From Macrostomum lignano (Eukaryota): DNA of 64,000 nucleotides. The notes under the pieces are model-generated. The model was given only the letters and a program-made list of their open reading frames with translations, was not told the origin of the DNA and did not search any database. How positions within the stretch are numbered: position 1 is the stretch's first letter; each line of letters starts with the position of its first letter. Made by a program: the position numbers and the translations under genes. Positions 17,183-57,961 of this stretch are shown piece after piece. Location: NCBI GenBank assembly GCA_002269645.1, contig NIVC01000206.1:610803-674802 (forward strand), given 5' to 3'.

Positions 17183-17219
<37 letters not shown>

Positions 17220-17220
17220 G

Positions 17221-17305
<85 letters not shown>

Positions 17306-19900: not shown

Positions 19901-20344
19901 ACCCCCAAGAAAAAGAAAGAATTTTTTCAAGAAGAAATATATTTTATTTTATAACCTGAAGTGATTACCGACCAATCGGCTCTCTGAACTACCAGAATCC
20001 ATCATCATCATCATTAATCGACATTTCATGCCGGTATATTTGCATAAAGATCTTTTTTAAAGGGAGCGACAAGTCCAAAAAGGATTCAATATTGTTCTTT
20101 TTGAAAATCAGCGTCCGTGTTATTCGTCAGGTCTGGTGCTTGAGCCATGGACAGCTAAAGCAAAAGGACGTGCTACTCTCACAGAACTCTCACCGAATTA
20201 TCGGAAAATGTGTTTTATCGGGGGTGTACTCATAAGTCTATCTAGTAAGTTCTACTATCTAAGCAAAATTTCTGTGTTTTCTATCTCTATTTTGTGGCGA
20301 AGACCGTCCTTCTGATTTAGCTGTCCTTAGTTTGACCTCTTTAC

Positions 20345-21265: not shown

Positions 21266-21669
21266 TGTTGCTTTGGAATTTCGACACGATCTACAGAAGT
21301 GAGGATGGAAAGGCAGATTGCATGCTATATTAAGCTAGTCTTGATTTGTCAATAGAATCCTACACCATTACCTGGCTTGTTTGCTCTGTTTTCCCAATAT
21401 TTGACGGCACGAAAAAGCTAATGGAACGCAGATGAAACTCTAGAAAGAAGTTACACAATCTCCGGATGTTTCTATTTTTGTTGCATTCGTATTGACATAC
21501 TAAATATGCCAGAAATTTGACTTATCAATTTTACGCGCTGCTTTGCAACCGAATTGTATTTGTTGAGTGCTTCAGCACTTCTACTGCTAGTAGTGTGATA
21601 CGCTTGTTTGGATAAAAATAATAAAAAGGACTCTCGGAGCCTGACCCTATAGTCTATAGCAATACCACC

Positions 21670-22235
21670 TTCTTGTCTATGGTCAATACTCCCAACTTGT
21701 CTATGGTCAATACTCCCAACTTGTCTATGGTCAATACTCCCAACTTGTCTATGGTCAATACTCCCAACTTGTCTATGGTCAATACTCCCAACTTGTCTAT
21801 GTTCAATACTCCCAACTTGTCTATGGTCAATACTCCCAACTTGTCTATGGTCAATACTCCTTTTTTGTCTATGGTCAATACTCCCAACTTGTCTATGGTC
21901 AATACTCCCAACTTGTCTATGGTCAATACTCCCAACTTGTCTATGGTCAATACTCCCAACTTGTCTATGGTCAATACTCCCAACTTGTCTATGTTCAATA
22001 CTCCCAACTTGTCTATGGTCAATACTCCCAACTTGTCTATGGTCAATACTCCTTTTTTGTCTATGGTCAATACTCCCAACTTGTCTATGGTCAATACTCC
22101 CAACTTGTCTATGGTCAATACTCCCAACTTGTCTATGGTCAATACTCCCAACTTGTCTATGGTCAATACTCCCAACTTGTCTATGGTCAATACTCCCAAC
22201 TTGTCTATGGTCAATACTCCTTTTTTGTCTATGGT
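21670..22235. repeat. 24-bp minisatellite with higher-order periodicity
   Basis: TTGTCTATGGTCAATACTCCCAAC units; variants recur every 192 bp. Confidence 0.95.
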
Positions 22236-23029
22236 CCTGCGAAAAAATACTCGTATTTTCCTTTGATAAAATTCTCCAACGCAGCACCACAGGCCATAAA
22301 ATTTCTATGTTCAAAGACTGCAGCGGATCGTTAGGGAAAAAAGTTTAAAATGCTTTTTAGCCTAAGCTGCATCCCATGCTCAGAGCCTGGCTGATTGACA
22401 CGAATTCCACTATCTATTGTGTATAGCTGCTAGCGTGTTAAAACGAGTGCTGGATGTCTAACCAACCTGTCTCATAAAAAAGATAGATAGTGCATAGCTC
22501 TATTTGCAGACTTTTACAGCAACTTATACGTACCTCCCAGAACCATTCTTTCCCTCCCTTATCTCAACAGCCTGGCAACCTCGCCCCCCCCCAACTGCAT
22601 TAAGCCGTATTCAGGTGTACTAGACTGCGATCGATAATAAATAAGAAATTCTCGGCATCTGTCGATACAAGGCTTTGCGCGCACACACAAAATGCTACCA
22701 ACCTAGCTTTAATCCCGTTTCCAATTGAGTTAGTGCACTAATTCAGGGTTAATAATGGGTAGGCTCTCTTTTTCATTCAGCAGGAAATTAACCACTGCCT
22801 CTCTCATCCCATTTTTCTTTTTTAAATATTTTTCCTTTTCTTATTGAATTGATTTTTAAGCCATCGTCTGTGAAGCTTCTTTGTTAATTGACCGACCGGC
22901 ATTCAGAATTATCCTGGACGGCTGTCAGTGCGCTGGGTTCACGGGCAGGGAAATCATTTCGTCTGTGGCTGCTGCCTGCCTCACTCCCAACTGGCTCCTC
23001 ACCTCTCACCCTCCTTCACCCCACTCCCA

Positions 23030-30900: not shown

Positions 30901-33900
30901 GTTTCTTAGAAACATCAACCGCTAAGAGAGTACGCGCAGGATTTTTTTTGAAATAGTAAAACAAATTTTGGATGCCGTGTAGCCCAGTGGTCTGGCGCGG
31001 CGCTCTGATGCCGATTCCAAGTGCAGTCACATAAATTTGGGGCTAAATTGGAATCTGTCAGAGGAGTCAGCGAAATAGGCAGTAATGCCTTCTCGCCCGG
31101 CTGTGTGACAATGTCGCTTCTTAAAGTGCGCCAGGGTGCCCGATGAAATCGGTACCGAGGCCAAGAAGCGTCCCTCAGTCACTTGCGTCCAGGCGCGTCA
31201 CCACCGGGTGGGGGGGGGGCACAGGGGGACATGCCAATGCTTTTTCCCCCCAACCCCACCTTGTGAGTCGTTGTGGTAATAAAATCAATGTGGTAACCTG
31301 CGGCGCCAAAATGAGTTCCTGCGGCGCCAAAATGAGTGCCTGCGGCGCTAAAATGAGTGCCTGCGGCGCCAAAATGAGTGCCTGCGGCGCTAAAATGAGT
31401 GCCTGCGGCGCTAAAATGAGTGCCTGCGGCGCTAAAATGAGTGCCTGTGGCGCTAAAATGAGTGCCTGCGGCGCTAAAATGAGTGCCTGTGGCGCTAAAA
31501 TGAATGCCTGCGGCGCTAAAATGTGTGCCTCCGGCGCTAAAATGAGTGCCTCCGGCGCTAAAATGAGTGCCTGCGGCGCTAAAATGAGTGCCTGCGGCGC
31601 CAAAATGAATGCCTGCGGCGCTAAAATGAGTGTCTGCGGCGCTAAAATGAGTGCCTGCGGCGCTAAAATGAGTGCCTGCGGCGCTAAAATGAGTGCCTGT
31701 GGCGCTAAAATGAGTGCCTGCGGCGCTAAAATGAATGCCTGCGGCGCTAAAATGAGTGCCTGTGGCGCTAAAATGAGTGCCTGCGGCGCCAAAATGAGTG
31801 CCTGCGGCGCTAAAATGAGTGCCTGCGGCGCTAAAATGAATGCGTAAATGAGGGCCAAAATTTAGTCATGTACATGTTGAATTCTTGGCTTTGTCCCCCC
31901 TCAGATCCGTTTTCGCGATTTTAAAATTATTTTATGTAGAAAATAGAAAATAGCTTGGAAACCTTGTGTACCTGAGTACACTCCTAATCTGGAACCTTAA
32001 TTATTACTAGTGGCGGAAGAGCCTGCTCAATGGCTGAGGCGCCGAATTACTTATTTAGTTTAGTTTTAGTTAGTACACCATTGTTGTAAAATATCTTTCG
32101 GAAACAATGCGTTTAATGTCGATACGCCTACTTAGAGTAGACACTTAGCAATCTAGACGAAAAATTTGCGAATTATCTCCAATCAGGACGCCGCAGCGTA
32201 GGTCCCACCACCGAGTCCACCGATCTGCTGCTGCACGCCGTCTGCCGGCTGGACGACTTCGAGCTGCTCAGAAAAGAGTCGCGCGAAAATCTCCGAGAAA
32301 TACGCAGCGCCAAAAATCGAGTAGACGAACGCGCTACGCACTATAGAAGCCTGGGCGTGCTGGAGCGATCGCAGAGTGTGGATTACAGCTTGTTAAAGCA
32401 TCTGGCCAGAGAGCTGGCGGGAATCCAGTTCTATGCTGAGGAGCGCGAGCGGCTGCTCAATAAATTCTGGATTTGCGAGCTGCCGCCATGGGCTGTTCAT
32501 AGTCGGCAGGTGCGAATTCATTAGCAAAATGTGTCCCCCTGAATCCAATCTGCAATTCCTAAAATCGAATCCCTAATTCCTAGAATCGAATCCCCAATTC
32601 CTAGAATCGAATCGCCAATTTCTAGAATCGAATCCCCAATTCCTAGAATCGAATCCCCAATTCCTAGAATCGAATCCCCAATTCCTAGAATCGAATCCCC
32701 AATTCCTAGAATCGAATCCCCAATTCCTAGAATCGAATCCCCAATTCCTAGAACCGAATCCCCAATTCCTAGAATCGAATCCCAAATCCTAGAATCGAAT
32801 CGCCAATTCCTAGAATCGAATCCTCAATTCCAATAATCGAATCCCCAATTCCTAGAATCGAATCCCCAATTCCTAGAATCAAAAAATCGCCAATTCCTAG
32901 AATCAAATCGCCAATTCCTAGAATCTAATCCCAATTCCTAGAATCGAATCGCCAATTCTTAGAATCGAATCCTCCTAGAATCGAATTCATAATTCCTAGA
33001 ATCGAATCCCCAATTCCTAGAATCGAATCCCCAGTTCCTAAAATCGAATACCCAATTCCTAGAATCGAATCCCCAATTCCTAGAATCGAATCGCCAATTC
33101 CAAGAATCGAATCCCCAATTTCTAGAATCGAATCGCCAATTCCTAGAATCGAATCCCCAATTCCTAGAATCGAATCGCCAATTCCTAGAATCGAATCCCC
33201 AATTCCTAGAATCGAATCCCTAATTCCTAGAATCGAATCCCCAATTCCTAGAATCGAATCGCCAATTTCTAGAATCGAATCCCCAATTCCTAGAATCGAA
33301 TCGCCAATTGCTAGAATCGAATTCATAATTCCTAGAATCGAATCCCCAATTCCTAGAATCGAATCCCCAATTCCTAGAATCGAATCCCCAATTCCTAGAA
33401 TCGAATCGCCAATTCCTAGAATCGAATCCCCAATTCCTAGAATCGAATCGCCAATTGCTAGAATCGAATTCATAATTCCTAGAATCGAATCCCCAATTCC
33501 TAGAATCGAATCCCCAAATCCTAGAATCGAATCGCCAATTCCTAGAATCGAATCCTCAATTCCAATAATCGAATCCCCAATTCCTAGAATCGAATCCCCA
33601 ATTCCTAGAATCAAAAAATCGCCAATTCCTAGAATCAAATCGCCAATTCCTAGAATCTAATCCCAATTCCTAGAATCGAATCGCCAATTCTTAGAATCGA
33701 ATCCTCCTAGAATCGAATTCATAATTCCTAGAATCGAATCCCCAATTCCTAGAATCGAATCCCCAGTTCCTAAAATCGAATACCCAATTCCTAGAATCGA
33801 ATCCCCAATTCCTAGAATCTAATCCCAATTCCTAGAATCGAATCGCCAATTCTTAGAATCGAATCCTCCTAGAATCGAATTCATAATTCCTAGAATCGAA

Positions 33901-35078
33901 TCCCTAATTCCTAGAATCGAATCCCCAATTCCAAGAATCGAATCCCCAATTCCTAGAATCCATTCGCCAATTCCTAGAATCGAATCCCCAATTCCTAGAA
34001 TCGATTCGCCAATTTCTAGAATCGAATCCCCAATTCCTAGAATTGAATTCATCCCCAATTCCTAGAATCGAATCCCCAATTCCTAGAATCGAATCCCAAA
34101 TCCTAGAATCGAATCCCCAATTCCAAGAATCGAATCCCCAATTCCTAGAATCCATTCGCCAATTCCTAGAATCGAATCCCCAATTCCTAGAATCGAATCG
34201 CCAATTTCTAGAATTGAATTCATCCCCAATTCCTAGAATCGAATCCCCAATTCCTAGAATTGAATTCATCCCCAATTCCTAGAATCGAATCCCCAATTCC
34301 TAGAATCGAATCCCAAATCCTAGAATCGAATCGCCAATTCCTAGAATCGAATCCCCAATTCCAAGAATCGAATCCCCAATTCCTAGAATCCATTCGCCAA
34401 TTCCTAGAATCGAATCCCCAATTCCTAGAATCGATTTGCCAATTTCTAGAATCGAATCCCCAATTCCTAGAATTGAATTCATCCCCAATTCCTAGAATCG
34501 AATTCCCAATTCCTAGAATCGAATCCCCAATTCCTAGAATCGAATCCCCAATTCCTAGAATCGAATCCCCAATTCCTAGAATCGAATTTATCCCCGATTC
34601 CTAGAATCGAATCCCTTATTCCTAGAAACGAATCTTTAATTTCTAGAATGGAATCCACGATTCCTAGAATCGAATCCCGAATTCCTAGAATTGAAAGTAA
34701 CCCTAGAAACGAATGTAGTTTTCTTAGAAATGAAATGGAATTCCTGGAAATTCAAAACTATCTTCCAAAATCGTAATTCGAATTCTCAGACGCAACTAAT
34801 CGAAAGCCCCGATCTCCCATCCCATCCCGTTATCAAAGGCCCGCTATTATCACCAGTACCTGCACCAGGGCTCAGCCAAGCCCAACCTTGAAGCGGAGCG
34901 CTGGAAAGGTCGCTACGCGGCTCTCAAAGAAATGCTCGAACAGCGACTATCAAGCGACGAGGCCCGATCGGTGTTCAATGAGAATTTCTCCGGAGCCGAG
35001 ACGCTGCTTTCGGTTGCCAGACACAATCTCGAACCAGCCTCATCTCCGGCTGAAAGCGCGTACACCGTGCACTTTTGA
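24918..35078 (+). CDS. Centrosomin/myomegalin-like coiled-coil protein B with complete CM2 domain
   Basis: Coiled-coil exons 24918-25370, 25984-26412, 26998-27306, 28495-28746, ~29353-29488, 29838-30111, 30602-30898, 32187-32509 (AVCRLDDFELLRKE...LLNKFWICELP) and 34790-35078 (...ETLLSVARHNLEP, cf. myomegalin LRKARGNLE). In-frame TGA at 24990 and unresolved phase breaks. Confidence 0.6.
25435..25700. repeat. Degenerate GGGATTCA(T/G)TT repeat
   Basis: ~11-bp units. Confidence 0.8.
27358..28320. repeat. 20-bp minisatellite (~48 copies)
   Basis: CCTGTGATATGTTAGACACA units. Confidence 0.95.
31300..31845. repeat. 21-bp minisatellite (~26 copies)
   Basis: GCCTGCGGCGCTAAAATGAGT units. Confidence 0.95.
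32540..34690. repeat. 21-bp minisatellite (~100 copies)
   Basis: AATTCCTAGAATCGAATCCCC units. Confidence 0.95.
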
Positions 35079-39544: not shown

Positions 39545-40817
39545 CTAGAAATAGTCTAGTAACCTACCTAGGCAAACTGGACTTAGTATTTAGGCCTAAC
39601 ATATGATCTTGTGATTTTTTACTACTTTAGCCTAACTTTCAATTATATGTAGCTTTTTAAAATTATATTTATCCCTATTGGAATAGAATCAGCAAAGCCT
39701 ACAAATGCTGCATTGAGCATTACGAAAGATAGGCTCTACTTCAAGTTCAAAGGGTGAAAGCAGTTGTTATTTGTCCAATGACTGGACAAATAACCTTTTG
39801 CTATTCAGGTTTTTCTTTTTTGCCAAAGACAAGATGCAAAATCGCACCTTTGGCTTTACTCATTTTCATTGTGCAATTTTAAGGCTCAAAGTGCAATTTC
39901 TCTTTTTCTTATTTTAAGGCAGTGCAAATAAGTTTTTAACAGAAAAATAGGTTGAGACCGCAGCTACATTTAAATTTCAGGGTGCAATTTTTCAATTTAA
40001 GGTGCATACATATTCTATGCACAAAAATAAACCCAGTTGCTATTTGTCTAGTTAAATTGCTAACATGAATATCTATTTGTTTAGTGATAAATATTCTAGA
40101 TTTTTAAGACCTTTTCTAGTATCCTGATTAATATTTTGTTATACTAGTGCAAGCAAAGCAGATATGTAATGCATGCGCAATTTGGTATAATTTGGTATAC
40201 AAGACAAATATTAATATAACATAATAATCAAGATACAAGTAAAAGTCTTTAAAGTCTAGGAATATTCACCCTTGGAGTTTTCGTAAAATAGAATATAAAT
40301 TTAACTAGACAAATAACAAAATGTCTATTTGTCCAGTATTAACTAGATGAATAAAGAAAGATAGCTATTATGCAGTAACCAGACAAATAACCACATTGCT
40401 TTTTGTCTGGTCACCAAACAAATAACAGTTGCCAAGGGTGAAAACCTAAAGATGTGTGCTTGAAGATAGTGTCAATTTATTATATAATATATTGCACTTT
40501 ATACCTTTAGCATTATTAAAAAATATTCCAAAAGAGCATTTTTGTCATAAATCAAAATTTGCTAATTTTTTAAAACTCTAAATTTTGACTGTTTTATTGC
40601 ATATTTATTTGAAAAAGTTTTTTTTGATTTGATATAAATTTATTTGATTTAATAAATTTATATCTCATTCCCATTACTTGTATTAGTCTCTATTGCAAAC
40701 CAAAATTGACTAAATTTTGACTAAAAAGCTTGAGGAAACTCATTTTAGGCAAATTTGTAGCTACTTAAGGTACCAATGTAAGATAAGATGCAACAGTCAT
40801 GATTGCAAAATAAAAAT

Positions 40818-41133
40818 ATCAGAGTATTATGATGATAGTATTAATCCATTCTCTGACCAAGTTTATGTGTGAAGACTGGCTTATCATCTATTATATAAGT
40901 CTTGTCTTTTGCACTAAGTTGGTGTGCGCGCCACCTTGGAAGGCTTCTCTATTTGTGCTGCTAATTTATTGTCACTTGGATATCTGGCAACCTATTCTAG
41001 CATTACAGGTTGTTAGTTTTCTGTCCTTTTTAAACAGAAACACCTGTTTTGTATGCCTGATAATCCAATATGACTGCATGCATATTTGGAGATTGCTGTT
41101 AAGATGTTAAATTTGGATCTGAATGACTCTGAT
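40818..41133 (+). ncRNA. SNORD17: Long C/D snoRNA, SNORD17/snR65-like, copy 1
   Basis: C box 40829-40835; TTAATCCATTCT+CTGA (D') complementary to 28S GAAUGGAUUAA (human U3797/yeast U2347 site); D box 41119-41122; terminal stem atcagagt/actctgat; 5' layout matches human SNORD17. Confidence 0.8.
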
Positions 41134-41245
41134 AAACTTGATAGTATCTGTAAATTTTCATATTGCAATTGTATTTAACAATATTATCAAACTAATTATC
41201 AAAAATGCTTGTTTAATTATCAAAAAACCCCAGCCTATTTGAATG

Positions 41246-41320
41246 TATAAATGATGCTACTCAACGTGTTTCGAGTCACAATGACTATGAATTAATAAAA
41301 AGAAACGATAACTGATCAAT
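41246..41320 (+). ncRNA. Weak C/D snoRNA candidate
   Basis: ATGATGC 41251, CTGA 41312; element AAGAAACGATAA loosely complementary to the 18S UUAU(C/G)GUU region; C box imperfect. Confidence 0.35.
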
Positions 41321-41507
41321 GTAATTTTGTGTGCTTATTTACAACTTAATTAATATTTGCAACTATGTCCCTCTAAATATTGTTCTTTGTTTACACACAT
41401 TTGCAGACTTGCTGTTTTTCCCTTGTCACGAGCAATTAACAAAAGCAAATCTGCTTCTGAAAATGTAAGTTCTAAAACATCTTGTACTTTAACAATTTGC
41501 TTTTTTA

Positions 41508-41587
41508 ATTTAATGATGAATACTTGACAAGCATATGTCGGAATGCACTCTTGTGCTTTCTGTAGATACTATTTTCATTCTGAATTT
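41508..41587 (+). ncRNA. SNORD27: C/D snoRNA U27/snR74-like (18S Am27 equivalent)
   Basis: C 41513-41519; GACAAGCATATG (41526-41537) + T + D' CGGA, same register as human U27; D 41580-41583. Confidence 0.8.
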
Positions 41588-41756
41588 TAAATTTATTCAA
41601 TCAACTTTTAGGCATTGGCGCTGTCTCATGTATGGCTTGACTTTGCGAATTTTATTTCAACTAACTTTGCAAATTTCAGGAGCTGGCATACAAAAATCGC
41701 CTACAAAGTCTTACAACATTTATTCGGTGAGTTTTTCTTCGAAGCTGTGAAACATT

Positions 41757-42148
41757 TGTCAGAGAAACGATGATGAATGCTTTAATCCATTCTCTGACTG
41801 AGCTTTTCAAATGTGCTTGAATAGTTATAAAAGGTCTTCCAAATTGGGGTTCTCTTTTTGCCTCTATTTGTTAACCTTTTCTTTCAGGCACAAATTTGAT
41901 TTGCTGGTGTGCGCGCCAGCTGGCTTGAACAGGCTCTCTTAGTGAAGTGCTGACTATTATTGTCACTTTAGGGTTTGCTTCAAGGGTGCTCGCTAAATTC
42001 CTCTTTATAGTCAGAGACTGATTATTTATTATACCGCCTTTGACTTGTTAGTGAGCACTTTAGAAGCGTGACCCGAAAAACGAGTGCTTGCACTTCTTTT
42101 TTGCAGAGCCGTTTGGATGTAAATTATGGTTCTGAGCGTTCTCTGACA
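41757..42148 (+). ncRNA. SNORD17: Long C/D snoRNA, SNORD17-like, copy 2
   Basis: C 41770-41776; same TTAATCCATTCT-CTGA guide; D 42132-42135; stem tgtcagagaa(a)cg / cgttctctgaca. Confidence 0.8.
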
Positions 42149-42201
42149 GCGATTATTAGTATATGGTTAGTTTTTATAGCCTAATTAACGCACCAGTTTG
42201 T

Positions 42202-42282
42202 CATCCACAAATGATGATCAATTTTACACCGTCATGCTGTTTGATTCGCCTGATAATAAAACTATGGCAGCTGATGTGGATG
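42202..42282 (+). ncRNA. C/D snoRNA, TACACCGTCATGCTGT family, copy a
   Basis: C 42211-42217, D' TTGA, D 42271-42274, stem catccaca/tgtggatg. Confidence 0.85.
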
Positions 42283-42399
42283 CTATCAATGTCCTTATGA
42301 CACTATTTAAAATCTAGAATATCGATTTTAAGTTTTATATCAGATTCAGAATCCTTAGAGATAAGGTTAGGTTGTGGCTTGGTTTAAAAAACTGGCTGT

Positions 42400-42477
42400 C
42401 AAAAATGATGATAATTATTCACAAATGTTTGTTTTGAGTTAACATGACAATTTCACATGCATCACCATCTGATGTAG
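42400..42477 (+). ncRNA. SNORD33: C/D snoRNA U33/snR55-like (18S Um1326 equivalent), copy a
   Basis: C 42405-42411; CATGCATCACCAT 42456-42468 + CTGA, complementary to 18S GUGGUGGUGCAUG. Confidence 0.85.
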
Positions 42478-42720
42478 TTTATTGAGTACATTTTAATGAA
42501 CATGTAAGCTATGCTTGCCATTTTATAAAAAGTACAACCTGTCGCCCAAAAACTCTACTTTCATAGGTACTGGTAGTAGATCATTAACAAGTTCTCAAGT
42601 CTACCGGTCCAGTGTTTCATTTTCTAAATTTAAGGTAATTATTAGTTTTGACTGTATTTTGCTTTTTGTGATCATACATAAACATAGCCTGAAATTTTCA
42701 TTTAAGCATGTACGTCGCTT

Positions 42721-42813
42721 GTATTCACCAAAAATGATGACCAATTTTTATACACCGTCATGCTGTTTGACACACTTTTGATAATTAAAAACAATGGCAG
42801 CTGAGGTGAATAC
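42721..42813 (+). ncRNA. C/D snoRNA, TACACCGTCATGCTGT family, copy b
   Basis: C 42734-42740, D 42801-42804, 9-bp stem gtattcacc/ggtgaatac. Confidence 0.85.
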
Positions 42814-43004
42814 AATAGGCATTTCCCTTAACACCTTTGCTGCTCATCATCATTCAGAATCATCGTTTATCTCCATTTTACTAACGAAAGTCTTTGTTCT
42901 TAAATCGATCTTTTAATTAAAAGCAGTCTGAAAAAATCCGAAGCAAATAGTTCTCTTTAGTACGAGTAGAGTCAGTAGCAAGCAAGCAACGTGTCCTCAG
43001 AAAT

Positions 43005-43090
43005 GTAATATGATGTTTGTTATCCCTGGCTTAGTGCAATAAGCTCTATGTAGTAAATACTTTATGCCAACTTCAATGGCTGCTGATTAC
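43005..43090 (+). ncRNA. SNORD1: C/D snoRNA snR38/SNORD1-like (28S Gm4362 equivalent)
   Basis: C ATGATGT 43010; GTTATCCCTG (43019-43028) + G + D' CTTA in snR38 register; D 43083-43086; stem gtaat/attac. Confidence 0.7.
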
Positions 43091-43207
43091 AGTTCTGTAT
43101 ACATACAATGATACGACACTTGCTGCTTTTTTGGTATTCAATTTTTAATTAGGACAATATATACTTTTTTTACTAATACTTAGGACTAGGTCTATTAACT
43201 GCAACTT

Positions 43208-43303
43208 GGGCGTTTTCAATGATGATTGGAATTACCGTCGGAAGTTGGTGTACCAATTTGTGTACGCTGGCGATTCTTTGAAGAAAATTTGCTGTCTGAG
43301 CCC
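43208..43303 (+). ncRNA. SNORD65: C/D snoRNA SNORD65/snR77-like (18S Um627 equivalent)
   Basis: C 43219-43225; TGGAATTACCG + T + D' CGGA, complementary to 18S CGGUAAUUCCA; D 43296-43299; stem gggc/gccc. Confidence 0.85.
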
Positions 43304-43363
43304 TTGATTTGCCATTTTTATGCCTATATTCTATAGTGTAGATAGCCTTGCGTATAAGCCTAC

Positions 43364-43447
43364 TTTTTATGATGATAAATACGTTTGCTTACCTTATCTG
43401 TGATCTCTTAAAGGGACGTGATAAGACACTACAGCGCTCTGATGTAT
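43364..43447 (+). ncRNA. SNORD48: C/D snoRNA U48-like (28S Cm1868 equivalent), copy a
   Basis: C 43369-43375; CTACAGCGCT+CTGA (43439), cf. human U48 CCGCAGCGCTCTGA; upstream TTTGCTTACC pairs with adjacent 28S GGUAAGCAGA. Confidence 0.8.
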
Positions 43448-43635
43448 ATATGTTGATCAGAAGTGTTTTTATATTGTAGAATATTTTATAAATTTCTCTA
43501 ACAATGCCACTTTCTCTTAATTACTACAGGCCTAAGCTGTCCTGGGGCCTTTTAAAATCAATATAAAAGTAAGTGAATTCAAAACCAATAACCAACTCAA
43601 TTTTTGCAGTAATAAGCTAAGCTCTACTATTATGT

Positions 43636-43710
43636 TTTTAATGATGACTATTTCCTTACCTACTATGATTTATTACTAATGTGAATGCAATATTTCCCGA
43701 ATCTGAAATG
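43636..43710 (+). ncRNA. C/D snoRNA to 28S GUAGGUAAGG (+ U50-like D guide), copy a
   Basis: C 43641; TTCCTTACCTACT + D' ATGA (43665); TTTCCCGAAT + D CTGA (43703) in U50/Gm2863 register. Confidence 0.75.
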
Positions 43711-43899
43711 CTAGTCTAAATTACATATATGTAAGCTTAAATTTTAAGAAGTTAATTAAAAAATAAATTTTGTCACTAATTATTTTCAGATTTAGCGATC
43801 CAGTTTGACTCTGATCTAAATTTAAGGTAAGCTTCAATTCACTTTTTTCATATTACTTTGATTTATGTATAACTTTTGTTACCAGCAATAGATTGGCTT

Positions 43900-43977
43900 C
43901 ATTCATGATGACTCAGATTTTACACCGTCATGCTGTATGATCTCGCATGAGTTTAGTTCTATTTGTCTCTGAGTTTT
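43900..43977 (+). ncRNA. C/D snoRNA, TACACCGTCATGCTGT family, copy c
   Basis: C 43905-43911, D' ATGA, D 43969-43972. Confidence 0.8.
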
Positions 43978-44114
43978 AAAGCCTTTATTAATACCTTACA
44001 AACTCTTTAAAACCCCCGGATTTTAAACCCACCGTATTCCAATCCCCGGAACTATTTATTGCATACATCCTTAAATTAAAGTCATACTGAAACAAAAAAT
44101 TTAAAGTTAGCATA

Positions 44115-44184
44115 GAGGTTTGATGAATGTAGTAAATTCGTGTTAAATAAAGATTTAAGACAAGCATTGATTGATCTGACTAAG
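44115..44184 (+). ncRNA. Weak C/D snoRNA candidate
   Basis: TTGATGA 44120, CTGA 44176; TTTAAGACAAGCAT (44154-44167) matches 13/14 to 18S AUGCUUGUCUCAAA, but box spacing is atypical. Confidence 0.25.
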
Positions 44185-44317
44185 CGATAAGATGAGAGAT
44201 TAATGAGCGGCACAAACACCAGAAAAAGCAGACAAACTTCACATGCTTACAGTTACTGTCCTGATTGAGTTACAGAGTTGAGACTTGATATCGAGACACA
44301 AAATAATTCTAAAGAAT

Positions 44318-44468
44318 GGTAGGGTGGCAAGTCAATAGAATTTCAGGTGGGGTGGCAGGTCAATAGAATTTCAGGTAGGGTGGCAGGTCAATAAAATCTC
44401 AGGTAGGTTAGCAGTCAACAGAATTTCAGGTAGGGTGGCAGGTCAATTGAATTTCAGGTAGGGTGGCA
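44318..44468. repeat. 28-bp minisatellite (~5 copies)
   Basis: GGTAGGGTGGCAGGTCAATAGAATTTCA units. Confidence 0.85.
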
Positions 44469-44479
44469 ATTAATCAAAT

Positions 44480-45075
44480 TCTAATACTAATCAAACCCGA
44501 GCAGCACGAGGCAAGACATTATCGTGATGGTGAATCTGACTTCTCTAAGCCACCCGCCATCCGAGGACGCCAACCCAACCAGTTTGAGACCGCCAGATGT
44601 TGGAGGAGGGAATGAGCGACTGATCGTTCGGCAACAAACTTGATGCTAGCGTTAAGCAAAGTTACGGCAGCCAAAGGTTAGTCAATTTTAAAACCGCTTT
44701 TACACATCTCGCCAGATAAGGGAAGGAGAGAGAGGCGAGGGTTGTTACGTCGACAAAGCAGACTAGCTTTAAAAGTGCACAGTGCCGTTCAGGATTGACT
44801 TTATGACTCGAAATTTTACACGCTTGTGTCGGAATAGCTAGAGATTGTTTGTGTCAAATTTTAGTAGGGTTGGTAAAAGTGGAGCGCCGCTATGGAGGAT
44901 TAAGTAAAAAATCCCGCTTTCTTTGCAGCAACTTTGCACTTTAAGGTGGGAATACTGGGAAGACGCTCTCCGTAGTGAGGTTAGGGTGGGTGCAAAACGG
45001 TGTCATTTGGTTGAGCGGTTTGAGAGTCCATGGCGAACAAAATTGGCCACAGACACAGTTTACAGATTTAAGGTA
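44480..45075 (+). mobile_element. Possible non-autonomous Helitron/Helentron-like insertion in a host-gene intron
   Basis: GC-richer island in an AT-rich intron; ends resemble rolling-circle elements (ctaatactaat...aaacccgagcagcacg; ttggttgagcggtttgagag...acagacacag). Confidence 0.3.
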
Positions 45076-45155
45076 TAAATGATGATAGAATATTGACACC
45101 TCTTGTCTGATATTTACTAAGTAAATGCGGAGTTTATTAGCTCTATCTGATCAAG
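45074..45155 (+). ncRNA. SNORD44: Dual-guide C/D snoRNA: U44-like (18S Am166) + snR48-like (yeast 25S G2791 equivalent), copy a
   Basis: C 45079; TGACACCTCTTGT + CTGA (45107); TATTAGCTCTAT + CTGA (45147). Confidence 0.88.
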
Positions 45156-45328
45156 TATTAAGCTCTTTTGTCCTAATAGAAATCGTTAAGAATCGATGCA
45201 AGTTTTCATATTCACTTATTTCATTTTAGAGGACGCTAAAATCCAGCTGGAAAATTGTAAGCCTTCTTAACAGTGCTTCAGGTCAGTTAGCAATGCTTAA
45301 GTATTTTTCCCCATCCTTATTTTACTTT

Positions 45329-45412
45329 TTACAATGATGAATTAATTATAGCATAGTTCATATGAACTGTACCCAGTGTACGGCATGTACAGAATTTTCA
45401 AGCCTGATATTT
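45329..45412 (+). ncRNA. SNORD77: C/D snoRNA U77-like (28S Am1521 equivalent)
   Basis: C 45334; GCATAGTTCA (45351-45360) + T + ATGA; D 45404-45407. Confidence 0.85.
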
Positions 45413-45592
45413 TATCTACCTATTAGCTACCTATTAGTTGTACCTATTTGATAAAACTACATCTTTTTTACAAGTCAGATATTTTTTTAATTTCTTTCCA
45501 GTTTGCCGCGTCAATGAAGTTTCACTGCTACATCCATCCAAGGTAATTTTTATTGCTCAGCTCTATTTAAATATATAACATATCTATAAATG

Positions 45593-45663
45593 CAGTGGCG
45601 GATCCGGGATTTTTTCCGTGAGGTCAGCCGACCCCCTTGATCCCCCTTCTGGATCCGATAGTG
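45593..45663. mobile_element. Degenerate 71-bp hAT-type MITE
   Basis: CAGTGGCGGATCC...GGATCCGATAGTG; flanks tataaatg / tatagata (6/8 TSD match). Confidence 0.55.
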
Positions 45664-45667
45664 TATA

Positions 45668-45743
45668 GATAAGTGATGAAAATAACACATCCGTGTTTGA
45701 TTTGGTCATGATATATAATTTCCATGCATCACCATCTGATTTG
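45668..45743 (+). ncRNA. SNORD33: C/D snoRNA U33-like, copy b
   Basis: GTGATGA 45673; CATGCATCACCAT + CTGA 45736. Confidence 0.85.
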
Positions 45744-45911
45744 CTTTTTTATTGGTATTAATAAAAAAATATGTGCTTTTAAAAAACTCGTCTCTACTGT
45801 AGCCATATTTTCACTTGCCCATTTTAGTGCATTTTTCCCTGGTTGGATATCAAGTCAAGTGTTAACTTGCAAAGTCAGGTAGGCTTGCACTCTTGAACTT
45901 GTGTTTTTGTT

Positions 45912-46079
45912 AGTTGCGACTTTCTCGTTTCAATCACCGACACGCAAAAAATATCTTATTGGTGACTGATTCATTTAGTCGCTAGATTACACTGACAACC
46001 GCATAAAATCCAGAAGCAGAGTAGAGATCTTTTGTTTATCTCCCAAAGTGTCTGCTTTTGATGAGCGCGGATTACATTA
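45912..46079 (+). ncRNA. Candidate box H/ACA snoRNA
   Basis: Hairpin 1 (gcgact/agtcgc; tcaccga/ttggtga), H box AGATTA 45984-45989, hairpin 2 (aaccgc/gcggatt; cagaagcaga/tctgcttttg), ACA at 46074 followed by 3 nt. Confidence 0.45.
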
Positions 46080-46143
46080 CTATTAATAGTAGTATTTAAC
46101 AAAACCGCCCTTTTATAATGGCAGAAATGGCACGCAATGTTAT

Positions 46144-46222
46144 AAATAATGATGATAACCCATAATTCTTCACTTTGAACTGAACAAAAACCAACTGATG
46201 TTAGCACTGGGTTCTGAACTAT
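46144..46222 (+). ncRNA. SNORD37: Dual-guide C/D snoRNA: U37-like (28S Am3697) + SNORD88/snR76-like (28S Cm3680), copy a
   Basis: C 46149; ATTCTTCACTTTGA + A + CTGA (46180); AGCACTGGGTT + CTGA (46214). Confidence 0.9.
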
Positions 46223-46262
46223 CATAATCATGGCTGCCACCTATATTTGTTTAGATTCTTGT

Positions 46263-49750: not shown

Positions 49751-50299
49751 ATGTTTCGCAAATTCGACGACAAAGAGAACATCTCGTCCGTAAACAACGC
49801 CAAGAACAGTGTCCAGAAGGGTATCAGAAACACCATCCTGACGCAGTATCCGGGATGCGCAGATTACGTTGACCAGATTCTACCCAAGAAGGAAACGCTC
49901 AGCGTTGTCAAATGCCACGAGCACATCGAGCTGTACGCCAACCCGGCTGGCGAGGTGCTGTTCTTCAGGCAGCGCGACTCGCCGCTGTATCCCAGCTTGA
50001 AACTGCTGCACAGATATCCGTTCATGCTGCCGCACATGCAGGCGGACAAGGGCGCTATCAAATTCCTGCTGAACGGGTCCAATGTGATGTGCCCGGGCCT
50101 GACCACGCCTGGCGGCCGGCTGTCCCAGGTGCCAGCTAGCACAGTTGTTGCCGTCATGGCCGAAGGCAAACAGCACGCGTTAGCAATCGGCTTGACGGCG
50201 ATGAGCGCGGACGAGATTGCCAGCAAGAACAAAGGAGTTGGCATCGAGACTGTGCACTGTTTAAATGACGGCCTGTGGCGGCTGCGTTCTGTCAAGTAG
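49751..50299 (+). CDS. MCTS1: Malignant T-cell-amplified sequence 1 (MCT-1/Tma20; PUA-domain ribosome recycling/reinitiation factor)
   Basis: 182-aa intronless ORF: MFRKFDDKEN...VKCHEHIEL...DKGAIKFLLNGSNVMCPGLT...GKQHALAIG...HCLNDGLW. Confidence 0.97.
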   Translation: MFRKFDDKENISSVNNAKNSVQKGIRNTILTQYPGCADYVDQILPKKETLSVVKCHEHIELYANPAGEVLFFRQRDSPLYPSLKLLHRYPFMLPHMQADKGAIKFLLNGSNVMCPGLTTPGGRLSQVPASTVVAVMAEGKQHALAIGLTAMSADEIASKNKGVGIETVHCLNDGLWRLRSVK

Positions 50300-53396: not shown

Positions 53397-54323
53397 ATGA
53401 GTTCCAGCATCTTAACTGGACTGACTGCGGCGATGCTGCTGCCACTCCTGGTGCACTGCGGCAATGGAACCATGCACAGCAGCATCTCGCTCGGCGGCTG
53501 CGTGGTGCCGCAGACTCCGCAGCACTCGCTGGCGGCCTCGAGCGCCCGCATGTGCGCCTTCCTGTGCTCTCAGCTCCGTCGTCCTTGCATCGCCTGGAGC
53601 CACCGCGCAGGCGTCTGCAACATGTCGGACAGCCTCCAGACCGCCAGTCTGACGAACGACACCGACTGCCAGGCGTGGAGCGCCCTGCGCCAGCTCGGCC
53701 TCGTCGCCTTCTGGCCCATGAGCAACGTCACTCGGACTCGCAATGCGGTCTCGAACAGCGGCCATCTCGACCTGCAGGAGAACATCCCGATGCAGTACAC
53801 GGACAGCGCCGTCAACTTCACTGGTCAGTCGGGTGTGTCAGAGCGGTTCAACATTGACGAGCTGACTTCGGTGTGTCTCACCAGCCTCACCATGTCAGTG
53901 TGGGTCAAGGTCACCAACCCAGCGAGAGGTTCGATGCCTCTGCTGGAGGGCCTCACAATGCCTTCTTCATACCACACTCGGTTTTGGCTTCATCCTACAA
54001 CTACCGACATCGAGTTCACCGTTGCATTCAAGGTCCGAGTGTCCGGACCCACCGACACGGCCAGCGGTTGGACCCACATCGCCGCGGTGTACGACAAGCA
54101 GACACCGGAAGTCAGGATCCTCGTCAACGGAACTCGACAGGCCACCAGCGGCTCGGCCACCGCTTTGACCTCGTGCGCGGACTTCGGCAGCAGCGTGCAG
54201 ATCGGAGCCGTCAGCCGCAATGCCGATCACAAACGCGTGTTCCAAGGCTTCATGAGATGCTTCGGAGTGTCAGAGAGAGCTCTGAGCGACTCTGAAATTG
54301 CCGCTTTGATCCAGCTGTGCTAA
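53397..54323 (+). CDS. Secreted PAN/Apple + LamG/pentraxin-like lectin, copy 2
   Basis: 308-aa intronless ORF, near-identical to copy 1 except the signal peptide and one central segment. Confidence 0.85.
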   Translation: MSSSILTGLTAAMLLPLLVHCGNGTMHSSISLGGCVVPQTPQHSLAASSARMCAFLCSQLRRPCIAWSHRAGVCNMSDSLQTASLTNDTDCQAWSALRQLGLVAFWPMSNVTRTRNAVSNSGHLDLQENIPMQYTDSAVNFTGQSGVSERFNIDELTSVCLTSLTMSVWVKVTNPARGSMPLLEGLTMPSSYHTRFWLHPTTTDIEFTVAFKVRVSGPTDTASGWTHIAAVYDKQTPEVRILVNGTRQATSGSATALTSCADFGSSVQIGAVSRNADHKRVFQGFMRCFGVSERALSDSEIAALIQLC

Positions 54324-56439: not shown

Positions 56440-56771
56440 CTACTGAAAGTAGATCAGCTGTCATCCAAAAATATTTTTGCTTCTTAGCAACAATTTTGCC
56501 GCCATGCATCATCCATGACCTTAGAAAAAGTATACGAGCCATGTGTTCTCAATCCATCCATTATAGTTTAAGTAGAAAAAAAATCCCGCACAACTTGCAC
56601 AACTTGCATGTTCAGTGATTTCATGAAAAATTTCGTACATCAATTTACCAGAACTGGACACAAGAGTGGAGCATGGTTAATGGAGTTCTGCATGTTGACA
56701 GCCAGCCAAGATAAATTTGCTGACTAAAATCTCAGTCTCACTTTGGGTCTTCGATTTTTGTTTGGATTGCG

Positions 56772-57345
56772 ATGCTTCTGCTTCTGCCGCTGCTTCTCGG
56801 CCTGCTTTTCTGCATCGGTGCGAACGCCGAGCTGCACAGCACTCGCTGGCGGCCTCGAGCGCCCGCATGTGCGCCTTCCTGTGCTCTCAGCTCCGTCGTC
56901 CCTGCATCGCCTGGAGCCACCGCGCAGGCGTCTGCAACATGTCGGACAGCCTCCAGACCGCCAGTCTGACGAACGACACCGACTGCCAGTCGTGGAGCGC
57001 CCTGCGCCAGCGCGGTCTCGTCGCCTTCTGGCCCATGAGCAACGCCACTCGGACTCGCAATGCGGTCTCGAACAGCGGCCATCTCGACCTGCAGGAGAAC
57101 ATCCCGATGCAGTACACGGACAGCGCCGTCAACTTCACTGGTCAGTCGGGTGTGTCAGAGCGGTTCAACATTGACCAGCTGACTTCGGTGTGTCTCGACA
57201 GTCTCACCATGTCAGTGTGGGTCAAGGTCACCAATGCGTCAAGGGGTTCGATGCCTCTGCTGGAGGGCCTCACAATGCCTTCTTCATACCACACTCGATT
57301 GTGCTTCGTCCTTCAACTGCCGACATCATGTTCGCCCGAATGCAT
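56772..57345 (+). pseudogene. PAN + LamG lectin, copy 3 (pseudogene)
   Basis: 43-nt frameshifting deletion at CAGCA microhomology after ELHS, 1-nt deletion near 57303, C-terminal third missing. Confidence 0.8.
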
Positions 57346-57961
57346 ATCACTTTTATATTGTTTTAAGCAGTCGTCTTCAGAACCAAGCATACATCTACAT
57401 GTACATCACTAGAACTATAACGCCTTTATGTACACGTCTATGTTTTGGCTTCGTCTGTCTGCCCATTTCCAGATATGATTATCTATCTGCTTCTAAAAAG
57501 ACATTTAGACGCGATCGTACGCCCGAGAAGGGCTCATGACGTTGAAAGTTAAAAATTTAGTAGTGTAGCATAAAATCACTATATATTTTTTAGTTTTATT
57601 CGTCAGACCCTACTTACAGAAAGCAATGAGAATTTAATAAAATCGCAATCAATTATTTTATGCTTGGATTTGGAGCATAGCATTCAACTATTAGGTAGTA
57701 TTCTATAATATTAATCAGAAGCATCAATACGACAGCTCCCTCAAACAGGATAAAAACCGACACCGTACAAACGCAAGCGGTCCCTTTTGAGTACAAAATT
57801 CTTTTTCGCCTCAGTTTACACGTCTCAAAGCAATTTGAGACTTTAATGACTAACAATATATGCACGAATAACAGTGACACTCGTCAGACTGACAGATGGC
57901 ATGCACCTCTCCAACAGGTGACCCTCATCTGTCTGGCTTGAGCTAAACATCCATCTGTCCA

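What the first reader, a model, noticed from the sequence alone, without database searches (positions are those of the whole stretch)
40818..42148. Two oversized SNORD17-like RNAs (~294 and ~366 nt) with conserved internal blocks
Seen: C-to-D lengths exceed the ~240-nt human SNORD17. The diverged inserts share GGTGTGCGCGCCA (40921, 41906) and TTATTGTCACTT (40966, 41957) at similar spacing. Established: TGCGCGCC and TTATTGTCACT are complementary to 18S GGCGCGCA and (yeast-type) AGUGACAAUAA, which are near each other in the 18S 5' domain; human U3797 is doubly modified (pseudouridine + 2'-O-methyl). Inference: the insert is a functional domain, either an 18S chaperone element or an embedded H/ACA-like module.
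Basis: partly seen in the sequence, partly recalled or inferred. Interest (0 to 1): 0.7.

Follow-up and report, generated by a model that had tools for sequence, protein, structure and literature searches.

The report
Two oversized flatworm methylation-guide snoRNAs
Two neighbouring genes in the flatworm Macrostomum lignano encode unusually long (about 316 and 390 nt) box C/D snoRNAs that aim the same conserved 28S rRNA uridine as human SNORD17. They share a small letter-perfect core inside otherwise unrelated inserts, and what that core does is still open.

Summary
Window 40818-41133 and 41758-42147 (+) each carry a C box, the D' guide UUAAUCCAUUC plus CUGA, a D box and an 8-9 bp terminal stem. 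C-to-D lengths are 293 and 365 nt.

The window is Macrostomum lignano (Mlig_3_7). The RNAs lie in a cluster of ordinary-sized C/D snoRNAs. The guide pairs over 11 nt with 28S GAAUGGAUUAA and selects the U equivalent to human Ψm3797. These are functional counterparts of SNORD17 and of C. elegans sn2417, but both fail the Rfam thresholds.

Both inserts fold alike: a variable hairpin, a 5-bp UGCG-capped hairpin (block 1), a closing helix with block 2 at its top, and a second variable hairpin. I read the conserved core mainly as architecture or a protein-binding site.

The 18S idea is not excluded. It is significant only against fungal/plant-type 18S (3/350 permutations), not against the one bilaterian-type 18S available (35/200). 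I could not obtain the M. lignano 18S.

The H/ACA idea is not supported. Homologues from other eukaryotes (about 74-262 nt) lack the blocks. This is a new variant of a known kind.

The parts
40818..41133 (+). Copy 1, whole predicted box C/D snoRNA (316 nt)
   Evidence: The terminal stem AUCAGAGU (40818-25) / ACUCUGAU (41126-33) encloses the C and D boxes. MFE z-score is -5.0 and -5.5 in my own control run.
40830..40856 (+). Copy 1: C box UGAUGA (40830-35), D' guide UUAAUCCAUUC (40841-51), D' box CUGA (40853-56)
   Evidence: The guide is an exact 11-nt complement of 28S GAAUGGAUUAA in rDNA contigs. The 5th nucleotide upstream of D' (A40848) faces the U of GAAU*GG.
40866..40913 (+). Copy 1: variable hairpin A
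   Evidence: The haplotype change G40871A keeps the pair with U40909.
40914..40939 (+). Copy 1: hairpin B. Block 1 is 40920-33 (UGGUG-UGCG-CGCCA), on a lower stem CUAAG/CUUGG.
   Evidence: Stem nucleotides are unpaired with probability <=0.15 and loop nucleotides with probability about 1.0.
40942..40977 (+). Copy 1: 5' strand of closing helix P2 (40942-61, GGCUUCUCUA..UGUGCUGC), then block 2 UUAUUGUCACUU (40966-77)
   Evidence: UUAUU is unpaired with p>=0.97. GUCA pairs with 41071-74 in the MFE.
41000..41052 (+). Copy 1: variable hairpin C
41076..41122 (+). Copy 1: 3' strand of P2 (41076-97), candidate C' box AGAUGU (41102-07), 11-nt D spacer (41108-18), D box CUGA (41119-22)
   Evidence: The C' assignment is inferred from GAUGU being conserved at the same distance from D in both copies.
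41758..42147 (+). Copy 2, whole predicted box C/D snoRNA (390 nt)
   Evidence: Terminal stem GUCAGAGAA (41758-66) / UUCUCUGAC (42139-47). MFE z-score is -6.3 and -6.9.
41771..41797 (+). Copy 2: C box (41771-76), D' guide UUAAUCCAUUC (41782-92), D' box CUGA (41794-97)
41812..41892 (+). Copy 2: variable hairpin A
   Evidence: The haplotype change A41829G keeps the pair.
41903..41920 (+). Copy 2: hairpin B. Block 1 is 41905-18, and the stem is extended by GC/GC.
41932..41968 (+). Copy 2: 5' strand of P2 (41932-50, GGCUCU..GAAGUGC), then block 2 (41957-68)
   Evidence: GGCUCU/AGAGCC and GAAGUGC/GCACUUC appear once the boxes and guides are held single-stranded.
41971..42074 (+). Copy 2: variable hairpin C, with a 14-bp helix AGGGUGCUCGCUAA/UUAGUGAGCACUUU
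   Evidence: The haplotype changes at 42013/14 (AG>GA) keep both pairs.
42090..42135 (+). Copy 2: 3' strand of P2 (42090-42110), candidate C' box GGAUGU (42115-20), 11-nt D spacer (42121-31), D box CUGA (42132-35)

Best explanation
**What they are.** These are two paralogous box C/D snoRNAs of Macrostomum lignano. They lie in a same-strand cluster of snoRNA genes, with short exons between some of them.

**Shown.** Each has a C box, a D box and an 8-9 bp terminal stem. Each has a D' guide that pairs over 11 nt with 28S GAAUGGAUUAA. That guide places the U equivalent to human 28S Ψm3797 at the methylation position, so they do the job of SNORD17 and of C. elegans sn2417.

**Inferred.** About 245 nt (copy 1) and 317 nt (copy 2) between D' and a degenerate C' box (RGAUGU, 11 nt before D) form a lineage-specific folded expansion. 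Its plan is the same in both copies:

- a variable hairpin A;
- a short hairpin B, which is block 1: 5 bp capped by a UGCG (UNCG-type) tetraloop;
- a long-range helix P2 that closes the rest of the insert and ends next to C';
- block 2 at the top of P2;
- a variable hairpin C.

I read the conserved core (hairpin B, P2 and block 2) as the architectural junction. It brings C' back to D' so that the internal methylation module can assemble. It probably also offers a sequence-specific binding site for a protein, or for a tertiary contact. I do not read it primarily as an antisense element.
For: - **Boxes, guide and stems.**
- **Terminal stems.** The two differ by two double compensatory changes around a shared UCAGAG/CUCUGA core: A-U becomes G-C on the outside and U-A becomes A-U on the inside (read).
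- **Guide target.** The guide is an exact complement of 28S in rDNA contigs. The flank is identical in 108/117 rDNA contigs.
- **Same register as known families.** Rfam's SNORD17 and sn2417 consensus sequences align over the guide in the same register.
- **Structure.** z-scores are -5.0 and -6.3 for the whole RNAs. The inserts alone score -4.9 and -6.9. Twelve neighbouring 317-nt controls average -1.4, with a minimum of -4.95.
- **Block 1 equals a hairpin.** Block 1 plus the preceding U is exactly a 5-bp hairpin in both copies, with pairing probability about 1. Different flanking sequences extend it: CUAAG/CUUGG in copy 1 and GC/GC in copy 2.
- **Common plan.** With boxes and guides held single-stranded, both copies give the same domain plan. 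The other conserved stretches (GGCU(U)CUCU, GUGCUG, and the 3' UGCA..GAG..GC) are the two strands of P2.
- **Haplotype changes.** Five of seven haplotype substitutions that fall in predicted helices keep the pair.
- **Second haplotype.** The blocks are intact in a second haplotype or homeologue, L073, which is 94% identical over this stretch.
Against: - **Too perfect for structure alone.** Pure architecture does not explain why 14 + 12 nt are letter-perfect with no covariation, while hairpins A and C have turned over completely.
- **Block 2 half unexplained.** The UUAUU half of block 2 is predicted single-stranded and has no structural role in my model. The pairing partner of its GUCAC half differs between the two predicted folds.
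- **Thin comparative base.** There are only two diverged sequences, so helix support rests on few changes.
- **Haplotype divergence is uninformative.** Inside the cluster it is 1.4% in snoRNAs against 1.9% in spacers.
- **No direct data.** I had no expression or size data, and no candidate protein.
- **18S remains suggestive.**
Confidence: 0.45

Rival explanations
1. **The reader's first option.** The two blocks form a bipartite antisense clamp for the 18S 5' domain. Block 1 pairs with GGCGCGCA (plus UACC after a 3-nt bulge). Block 2 pairs with AGUGACAAUAA, 34 nt downstream. One snoRNP would then both methylate 28S and hold or chaperone 18S.
For: - In whole rDNA units the best joint site of the two blocks is this 18S region, both in yeast-type L087 and in bilaterian-type L124.
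- Against L087 only 3 of 350 block permutations do as well. Block 2 alone scores 15/350.
- The flanks add pairing in one copy each. Copy 1 has a 13-nt exact complement, AUUUAUUGUCACU. Copy 2 has UGCGCGCCAGCUG against CAGCAGGCGCGCA, 12 of 13 paired.
- The UUAUU half of block 2 is predicted accessible.
- Precedents exist for C/D snoRNAs with extra antisense elements: snR190 (PMC8536666) and the extra base-pairing of PMC3116282.
Against: - Against the only bilaterian-type 18S at hand (GACGAAAAAU) the joint score is ordinary: 35/200. Block 1 alone scores 121/200 and block 2 alone 156/200.
- Block 1 alone is not significant even against yeast-type 18S (75/350).
- Block 1 is a stable hairpin whose ends coincide with the block.
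- The sno 5' element pairs with the target 5' element, so the two duplexes are crossed, not nested.
- No other homologue of this guide family carries the blocks.
- The M. lignano 18S itself was not available.
Confidence: 0.22
2. The blocks provide 'extra base-pairing' to 28S immediately 5' of the methylation site. This would be the mechanism of van Nues et al. 2011: it stabilises the 11-bp guide duplex. Block 1 UGUGCGCG would pair with CGCGCAUG, and block 2 UGUCACU with AGUGACG. The order would be collinear with the guide.
For: - The 28S flank CUAAUUAGUGACGCGCAU is verified in 108/117 rDNA contigs.
- The snoRNA order 5'-guide, block 1, block 2-3' is antiparallel-collinear with a contiguous 28S stretch.
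- RNAcofold of copy 1 with a 28S fragment pairs GUGCGCGCCAC with GUGACGCGCAU, 10 bp, next to the guide duplex.
- The mechanism is documented (PMC3116282).
Against: - The energies are ordinary. Block 1 scores -13.5 kcal/mol, which is only in the top 4-15% of rDNA windows. Block 2 scores -8.5, in the top 2-3%. The joint score is in the top 7-14%.
- Copy 2 shows no such pairing in cofolding (ddG 0).
- The two putative sites overlap.
- UUAU of block 2 is left unexplained.
- No comparable element exists in other homologues.
Confidence: 0.08
3. **The reader's second option.** The insert is an embedded H/ACA-like module that would pseudouridylate the same U. That would make a composite C/D-H/ACA RNA like the scaRNA U85.
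For: The human equivalent position is Ψm (PMC6182160). Composite C/D-H/ACA RNAs of about 330 nt exist (from my own knowledge of U85).
Against: - No H/ACA family matched at E<=10 in three permissive Rfam scans.
- No ACA or ANANNA is conserved at aligned positions.
- There is no pocket whose two strands complement GCGCAUGAA and GAUUAACG. Copy 1 has UAAUCCA (41061-67) and CAUGC only 10 nt apart, and copy 2 has neither.
Confidence: 0.02
4. The long forms are not the mature RNAs, or the copies are decaying. Only a short product would accumulate. The shared blocks would be intronic processing or splicing elements, or leftovers of gene conversion.
For: - I had no expression data.
- Haplotype divergence does not separate snoRNA from spacer within the cluster.
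- The 5' strand of the terminal stem can also pair with the D' region. TTCTCTGAC occurs at 41789-97 and again at 42139-47.
Against: - The 8-9 bp terminal stems, with two compensatory double changes, join the extreme ends of the long forms.
- A C-to-D' unit of about 40 nt is too short for a snoRNP.
- The inserts are far more structured than most neighbouring sequence.
- Long members (about 205-262 nt) recur in this guide family, and the vertebrate model is 238 nt.
Confidence: 0.07

Closest known systems
Vertebrate SNORD17 (HBI-43; Rfam RF00567)
   Same: It is a box C/D RNA. The D' guide AUCCAUUC-N-CUGA is in the same register, so it selects the same 28S uridine (human U3797). It has an unusually long D'-to-C' region (model length 238).
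   Different: Rfam scores are 17.4 and 10.0 bits against a gathering score of 45. Only the 5' 40-70 nt align, and the inserts share no sequence. The flatworm RNAs are 1.3-1.6 times longer. The host is a multi-snoRNA gene cluster, not SNX5.
C. elegans sn2417 (Rfam RF01222)
   Same: It gives the best Rfam match to the 5' part: UGAUGA..CUAAUCCAUUCUCUGA is identical over guide and D' (24.5 and 18.2 bits).
   Different: The model is 123 nt and its gathering score is 80 bits. It has no counterpart of the insert or the blocks.
Uncharacterised homologues from environmental eukaryote contigs (introns of RPS3A- and RPL10-like genes, and others)
   Same: They have the same C box and D' guide. Many are long: about 138-158, 185, 205, 222 and 262 nt.
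   Different: None carries block 1 or block 2. Their lengths are my own estimates from D boxes and short stems.
C/D snoRNAs with accessory antisense elements (yeast snR190; the 'extra base-pairing' snoRNAs snR70/75/76)
   Same: They have a canonical guide plus a further conserved element between D' and C', often presented on a stem (PMC3116282, PMC8536666).
   Different: In those cases the extra element pairs next to the methylation site, or within the same subunit rRNA. Here the adjacent-site pairing is weak, and the better match is to the other subunit's rRNA.

Membership tests
Box C/D snoRNA | C box RUGAUGA near the 5' end and D box CUGA near the 3' end, joined by a terminal stem | tested here: met
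   AUGAUGA is at 40829-35 and 41770-76. CUGA is at 41119-22 and 42132-35. The stems are 8 and 9 bp, with two double compensatory changes.
Box C/D snoRNA | Guide of >=10 nt complementary to rRNA that ends next to D or D', with the target opposite the 5th nucleotide | tested here: met
   UUAAUCCAUUC is an exact 11-nt complement of 28S GAAUGGAUUAA in contaminant rDNA contigs. A40848 and A41789 face the U.
Box C/D snoRNA | Internal C' box paired with D' | tested here: inconclusive
   Only a degenerate RGAUGU is present, conserved 11 nt upstream of D in both copies. No UGAUGA is found.
Box C/D snoRNA | Accumulates as a stable RNA bound by fibrillarin, Nop56, Nop58 and Snu13 | not testable with these tools
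   No expression or RNA-protein data were available.
SNORD17 (RF00567) | Score at or above the Rfam gathering threshold (45 bits) | tested here: not met
   17.4 bits (copy 1) and 10.0 bits (copy 2). There was no match in the gathering-threshold scan.
SNORD17 (RF00567) | Guides 2'-O-methylation of the 28S U equivalent to human U3797 | tested here: met
   The guide register matches the Rfam consensus. The SNORD17-U3797 assignment comes from PMC5025248. The methylation itself was not tested.
sn2417 (RF01222) | Score at or above the Rfam gathering threshold (80 bits) | tested here: not met
   18.2 and 24.5 bits. Only the C box, guide and D' align.
H/ACA snoRNA or composite C/D-H/ACA RNA | Hairpin-hinge (ANANNA)-hairpin-ACA, with a bipartite pocket complementary to the target flanks | tested here: not met
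   There are no H/ACA matches at E<=10. No conserved ACA or H box exists in the paralogue alignment, and no pocket for the 28S site.
rRNA-processing or chaperone snoRNA (U3/U14/snR190 type) | Conserved single-stranded element complementary to the organism's own pre-rRNA | tested here: inconclusive
   The best joint site is 18S GGCGCGCA...AGUGACAAUAA. It scores 3/350 against yeast-type rDNA but 35/200 against bilaterian-type. Block 1 is base-paired. The species' own rRNA was not available.
'Extra base-pairing' C/D snoRNA (van Nues 2011) | Conserved element complementary to rRNA adjacent to the methylation site | tested here: inconclusive
   Collinear 6-8 bp matches exist, but their energies fall only in the top 7-14% of rDNA windows. 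Cofolding support is seen in copy 1 only.

The most novel reading that the evidence does not exclude
One snoRNP carries both a canonical 28S methylation guide and a conserved two-part clamp for the 18S 5' domain. The clamp would pair with GGCGCGCA(AAU)UACC and AGUGACAAUAA, which flank one 18S hairpin. The RNA would then touch both subunit rRNAs in the primary transcript, or act as an 18S folding chaperone. This reading predicts that M. lignano 18S keeps the GACAAUAA form found here in fungal/plant-type rDNA at this site.
Probability: 0.2. Interest if true: 0.7.

Novelty: new variant of a known kind. Interest (0 to 1): 0.4.

Why it matters
To my knowledge flatworm snoRNAs are essentially undescribed; a full-text search for Macrostomum plus snoRNA found only passing mentions.

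This guide family aims a universally conserved 28S uridine, which is Ψm in human. It repeatedly carries long D'-to-C' inserts whose purpose is unknown in any organism. Two diverged paralogues in one genome isolate a roughly 60-nt core that selection has kept letter-perfect. That gives a concrete handle (a 14-nt hairpin and a 12-nt motif) for asking what the long inserts of SNORD17-type RNAs do.

If the core binds 18S, it would be an unusual cross-subunit snoRNA. If it is architectural, it shows how a C'/D' module can be assembled across a 250-320 nt insert.

Tried and rejected
1. **Rfam.** At gathering thresholds the whole window gave only a tRNA. Permissive scans gave only 5'-end matches to SNORD17 and sn2417.
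2. **RNAalifold on a MAFFT alignment of the two copies.** The diverged hairpins are not alignable by sequence, so the consensus was uninformative. I used constrained single-sequence folds instead.
3. **Haplotype divergence as a test of constraint.** The first count (1.4% against 4.3%) was misleading. The whole cluster is low (1.6%), and snoRNA and spacer do not differ. I dropped it.
4. **Orthologues through synteny with the MCTS1 gene.** The protein search found no other Macrostomum species; the next hits are 66% identical molluscs. Look-ups returned only M. lignano contigs: the window's own contig and two other contigs of the same locus (L001, L073), plus L002, which starts downstream of both copies.
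5. **rDNA in viral contigs.** None was found. Prokaryote assemblies yielded 120 contaminant eukaryote rDNA stretches, used as proxies.
6. **M. lignano 18S.** I found no route with these tools. No ORF crosses the site, so protein look-ups cannot reach it. I ran no further search on a long shot.
7. **My own 28S-flank idea.** The order looked attractive, but the statistics are weak.
8. **Two exact matches discarded as chance.** A 14-nt complement to a bilaterian-type 18S at 40664-77 lies in the most variable 100-nt bin. An 11-nt complement to the 28S flank at 43772-82 is a polypyrimidine tract at a splice acceptor.
9. **An 11-nt complement to the same 18S site in one environmental homologue (L017).** It is absent from its own paralogue and the stretch is AT-rich, so I treat it as chance.
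Full report
**1. Where the window comes from.** The intronless MCTS1/TMA20-like ORF at 49751-50299 is encoded on contigs of assembly GCA_002269645.1. A paper identifies that assembly as Mlig_3_7 of the flatworm Macrostomum lignano (PMC10733133). Locus L072 (contig NIVC01000206.1) is 100% identical to the window from 39757 onward. Two further contigs cover the locus:

- L001 is 97% identical over copy 1. It breaks into a run of N inside copy 2.
- L073 is 94% identical over 39752-44468. It carries both long RNAs with every block intact.

| Feature | Copy 1 | Copy 2 |
|---|---|---|
| C box UGAUGA | 40830-35 | 41771-76 |
| D' guide UUAAUCCAUUC | 40841-51 | 41782-92 |
| D' box CUGA | 40853-56 | 41794-97 |
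| D box CUGA | 41119-22 | 42132-35 |
| Terminal stem, 5' strand | AUCAGAGU, 40818-25 | GUCAGAGAA, 41758-66 |
| Terminal stem, 3' strand | ACUCUGAU, 41126-33 | UUCUCUGAC, 42139-47 |
| C-to-D length | 293 nt | 365 nt |
| Length with stems | 316 nt | 390 nt |

Around a shared UCAGAG/CUCUGA core, the two stems differ by two double compensatory changes. This is good evidence that the ends of the long forms belong together (read).

Block 1 is in fact 14 nt, because a U precedes it in both copies. A 14-mer plus a 12-mer shared in the same order and at similar spacing was never seen in 300 shuffles of the inserts. The rest of the inserts is largely unalignable.

**3. What kind of RNA.** No Rfam family reaches its threshold. 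In permissive scans only the first 40-70 nt match SNORD17 (17.4 and 10.0 bits; threshold 45) and C. elegans sn2417 (18.2 and 24.5 bits; threshold 80). These matches run through the C box, guide and D'.

To check the target with data rather than memory, I fetched contaminant eukaryotic rDNA from prokaryote assemblies.

- The guide is an exact 11-nt complement of 28S GAAUGGAUUAA.
- The 5th nucleotide upstream of D' faces the U of GAAU*GG.
- The 5' flank CUAAUUAGUGACGCGCAU is identical in 108 of 117 contigs.
- The register is the same as in the Rfam SNORD17 consensus.
- SNORD17 is assigned to human 28S U3797 (PMC5025248), and that position is Ψm at 100% (PMC6182160).

So these RNAs do what SNORD17 does, but they are not members of RF00567 by its own criterion.

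They lie in a same-strand cluster of ordinary 75-95 nt C/D snoRNAs running from about 40.8 to 46.2 kb. Members include SNORD27-, SNORD33- and SNORD34-like RNAs, several with exact 11-14 nt rRNA complements. Short putative exons bounded by AG and GT lie between some of them, for example 41407-41464, 41680-41726 and 43790-43826. No protein-coding ORF is nearby.

**4. Is the long insert peculiar to this species?** One scan of metagenome contigs with 'C box + D' guide' gave 69 loci. About half are chance hits in bacterial genes. The others are plausible eukaryotic homologues, some inside introns of RPS3A- and RPL10-like genes.

By D-box position and stems, their C-to-D lengths run from about 74 to about 262 nt. 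Several are above 200 nt. These are my estimates.

A long D'-C' region therefore recurs in this guide family. The flatworm RNAs are the longest seen here. None of the homologues carries block 1 or block 2, and the displayed Rfam SNORD17 consensus does not either. The blocks are lineage-specific.

**5. Structure.** Both RNAs fold far better than shuffles: z = -5.0 and -6.3. The inserts alone score -4.9 and -6.9. Twelve neighbouring 317-nt controls average -1.4, and the best control reaches -4.95.

Block 1 plus its preceding U is exactly a hairpin, UGGUG-UGCG-CGCCA, in both copies. Stem pairing probability is about 1, and the loop is of UNCG type. It is extended by different sequences in each copy: CUAAG/CUUGG across a 1x1 loop in copy 1, and GC/GC in copy 2.

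When boxes and guides are kept single-stranded, as they would be in a snoRNP, the two copies give the same plan:

1. D';
2. variable hairpin A;
3. hairpin B (block 1);
4. a long-range helix P2, formed by GGCU(U)CUCU..GUGC with GCA..GAG..GC;
5. block 2 at the top of P2;
6. variable hairpin C;
7. the 3' strand of P2, ending 3-4 nt before a conserved RGAUGU, which I take as a degenerate C' box;
8. an 11-nt spacer, then D.

The remaining conserved stretches of the paralogue alignment are the two strands of P2. Five of seven haplotype substitutions that fall in predicted helices keep the pair.

The D spacers differ at 4 of 11 positions. They have no exact complement of 10 nt or more in the rDNA proxies apart from one chance 10-mer that includes the D box. 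I assign no target to them.

**6. The 18S hypothesis.** In fungal and plant-type rDNA, 18S reads CAGCAGGCGCGCAAAUUACCC...GGUAGUGACAAUAAAU.

An unbiased RNAduplex scan of whole rDNA units puts the best site of block 1 and the best site of block 2 34 nt apart, at exactly this place. It is also the best joint 70-nt window in both a yeast-type unit (L087) and the only bilaterian-type unit available (L124).

| Test (block permutations doing as well or better) | L087, yeast-type | L124, bilaterian-type (GACGAAAAAU) |
|---|---|---|
| Both blocks jointly | 3/350 | 35/200 |
| Block 1 alone | 75/350 | 121/200 |
| Block 2 alone | 15/350 | 156/200 |

Each copy extends the match on one side. Copy 1 has a 13-nt exact complement at block 2. 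Copy 2 pairs 12 of 13 positions at block 1.

Four points count against the hypothesis:

- Block 1 is sequestered in a stable hairpin whose ends coincide with the block.
- The two duplexes would be crossed (5' element with 5' site).
- From my own knowledge, bilaterian 18S usually reads GACGAAAAAU at this site.
- I could not obtain the M. lignano 18S.

I put this reading at about 0.2.

**7. Other readings.** Extra base-pairing next to the methylation site (PMC3116282) is attractive. The snoRNA order guide, block 1, block 2 is collinear with the contiguous 28S stretch AGUGAC-GCGCAUG-(A)AUGGAUUAA. But the energies are ordinary: the joint score is only in the top 7-14% of windows. Cofolding supports it in copy 1 only.

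An H/ACA-like module is not supported. There are no H/ACA matches, no conserved H or ACA box, and no pocket for the target.

The possibility that only short products accumulate cannot be excluded without RNA data. The covarying terminal stems and the strong structure argue against it.

**8. Verdict.** These are two paralogous, very long SNORD17-type box C/D snoRNAs. The guide function is well supported by sequence.

The insert is a folded, lineage-specific expansion. I read its conserved core mainly as the architectural junction that closes the insert and returns C' to D', probably doubling as a sequence-specific binding site. This explains all conserved segments. The 18S reading explains only the two blocks.

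What remains unexplained is the letter-perfect conservation of 14 + 12 nt and the single-stranded UUAUU of block 2. One alignment to the species' own 18S would largely settle the matter.

This is a new variant of a known kind, of moderate interest.

Noticed in passing
window 40800-46250 (+): A same-strand cluster of ordinary-sized box C/D snoRNA candidates surrounds the two long RNAs: 41246-41326, 41508-41586 (SNORD27-like), 42203-42281, 42398-42478 (SNORD33-like, 36.3 bits), 42723-42811, 43002-43093, 43213-43290 and about 46148-46222. Short AG/GT-bounded putative exons lie at 41407-41464, 41680-41726 and 43790-43826. It looks like a non-coding multi-snoRNA host gene.
   Followed up: partly
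window 19836-19905 (-): This is the only Rfam gathering-level hit: a tRNA with a CAU (Met) anticodon loop and a 3-nt deletion in the T arm (34.6 bits). It may be a pseudogene or a tRNA-derived repeat.
   Followed up: no
window 20345-21265 (-), 53397-54323 (+), 56717-57412 (+): Three paralogous ORFs of 306, 308 and 231 aa have hydrophobic N termini and near-identical cores. This is a locally duplicated gene family of unknown function.
   Followed up: no
window 41789-41797 and 42139-42147; 40851-40856 and 41127-41132: The sequence around D' (UUCUCUGAC in copy 2, CUCUGA in copy 1) is repeated as the 3' strand of the terminal stem. The 5' end could therefore pair with either place. This could be an alternative fold, or a trace of how the long form arose.
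   Followed up: partly
window 41061-41067: Copy 1 repeats UAAUCCA, part of its own D' guide, in the 3' part of the insert. Copy 2 does not.
   Followed up: partly
L001 2225-2429 (equivalent to window 41918 onward): The other Mlig_3_7 contig covering this locus breaks into a run of N exactly within block 1 of copy 2. It resumes at window 45182, so copy 2 and several snoRNAs are missing from that contig.
   Followed up: partly
window 49751-50299 (+): An intronless MCTS1/TMA20 (PUA-domain) gene. It is 66% identical to mollusc orthologues, and the protein collection held no other Macrostomum species.
   Followed up: yes
window 3600-4400, 6700-8000, 15800-17300, 21500-22300, 31100-31900, 32900-34300, 61000-64000: Very dense microsatellite and tandem-repeat tracts. 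The last 3 kb is 62-67% G+C with a strong purine and G skew.
   Followed up: no
L017 1224-1420 (+): One of two paralogous SNORD17-type snoRNAs lies in an RPL10-like gene of an unidentified environmental eukaryote. It has an 11-nt complement (UAUUUAUUGUC) to the same 18S site as block 2, 15 nt after D'. Its sister copy lacks it, so it is probably chance in AT-rich sequence.
   Followed up: partly
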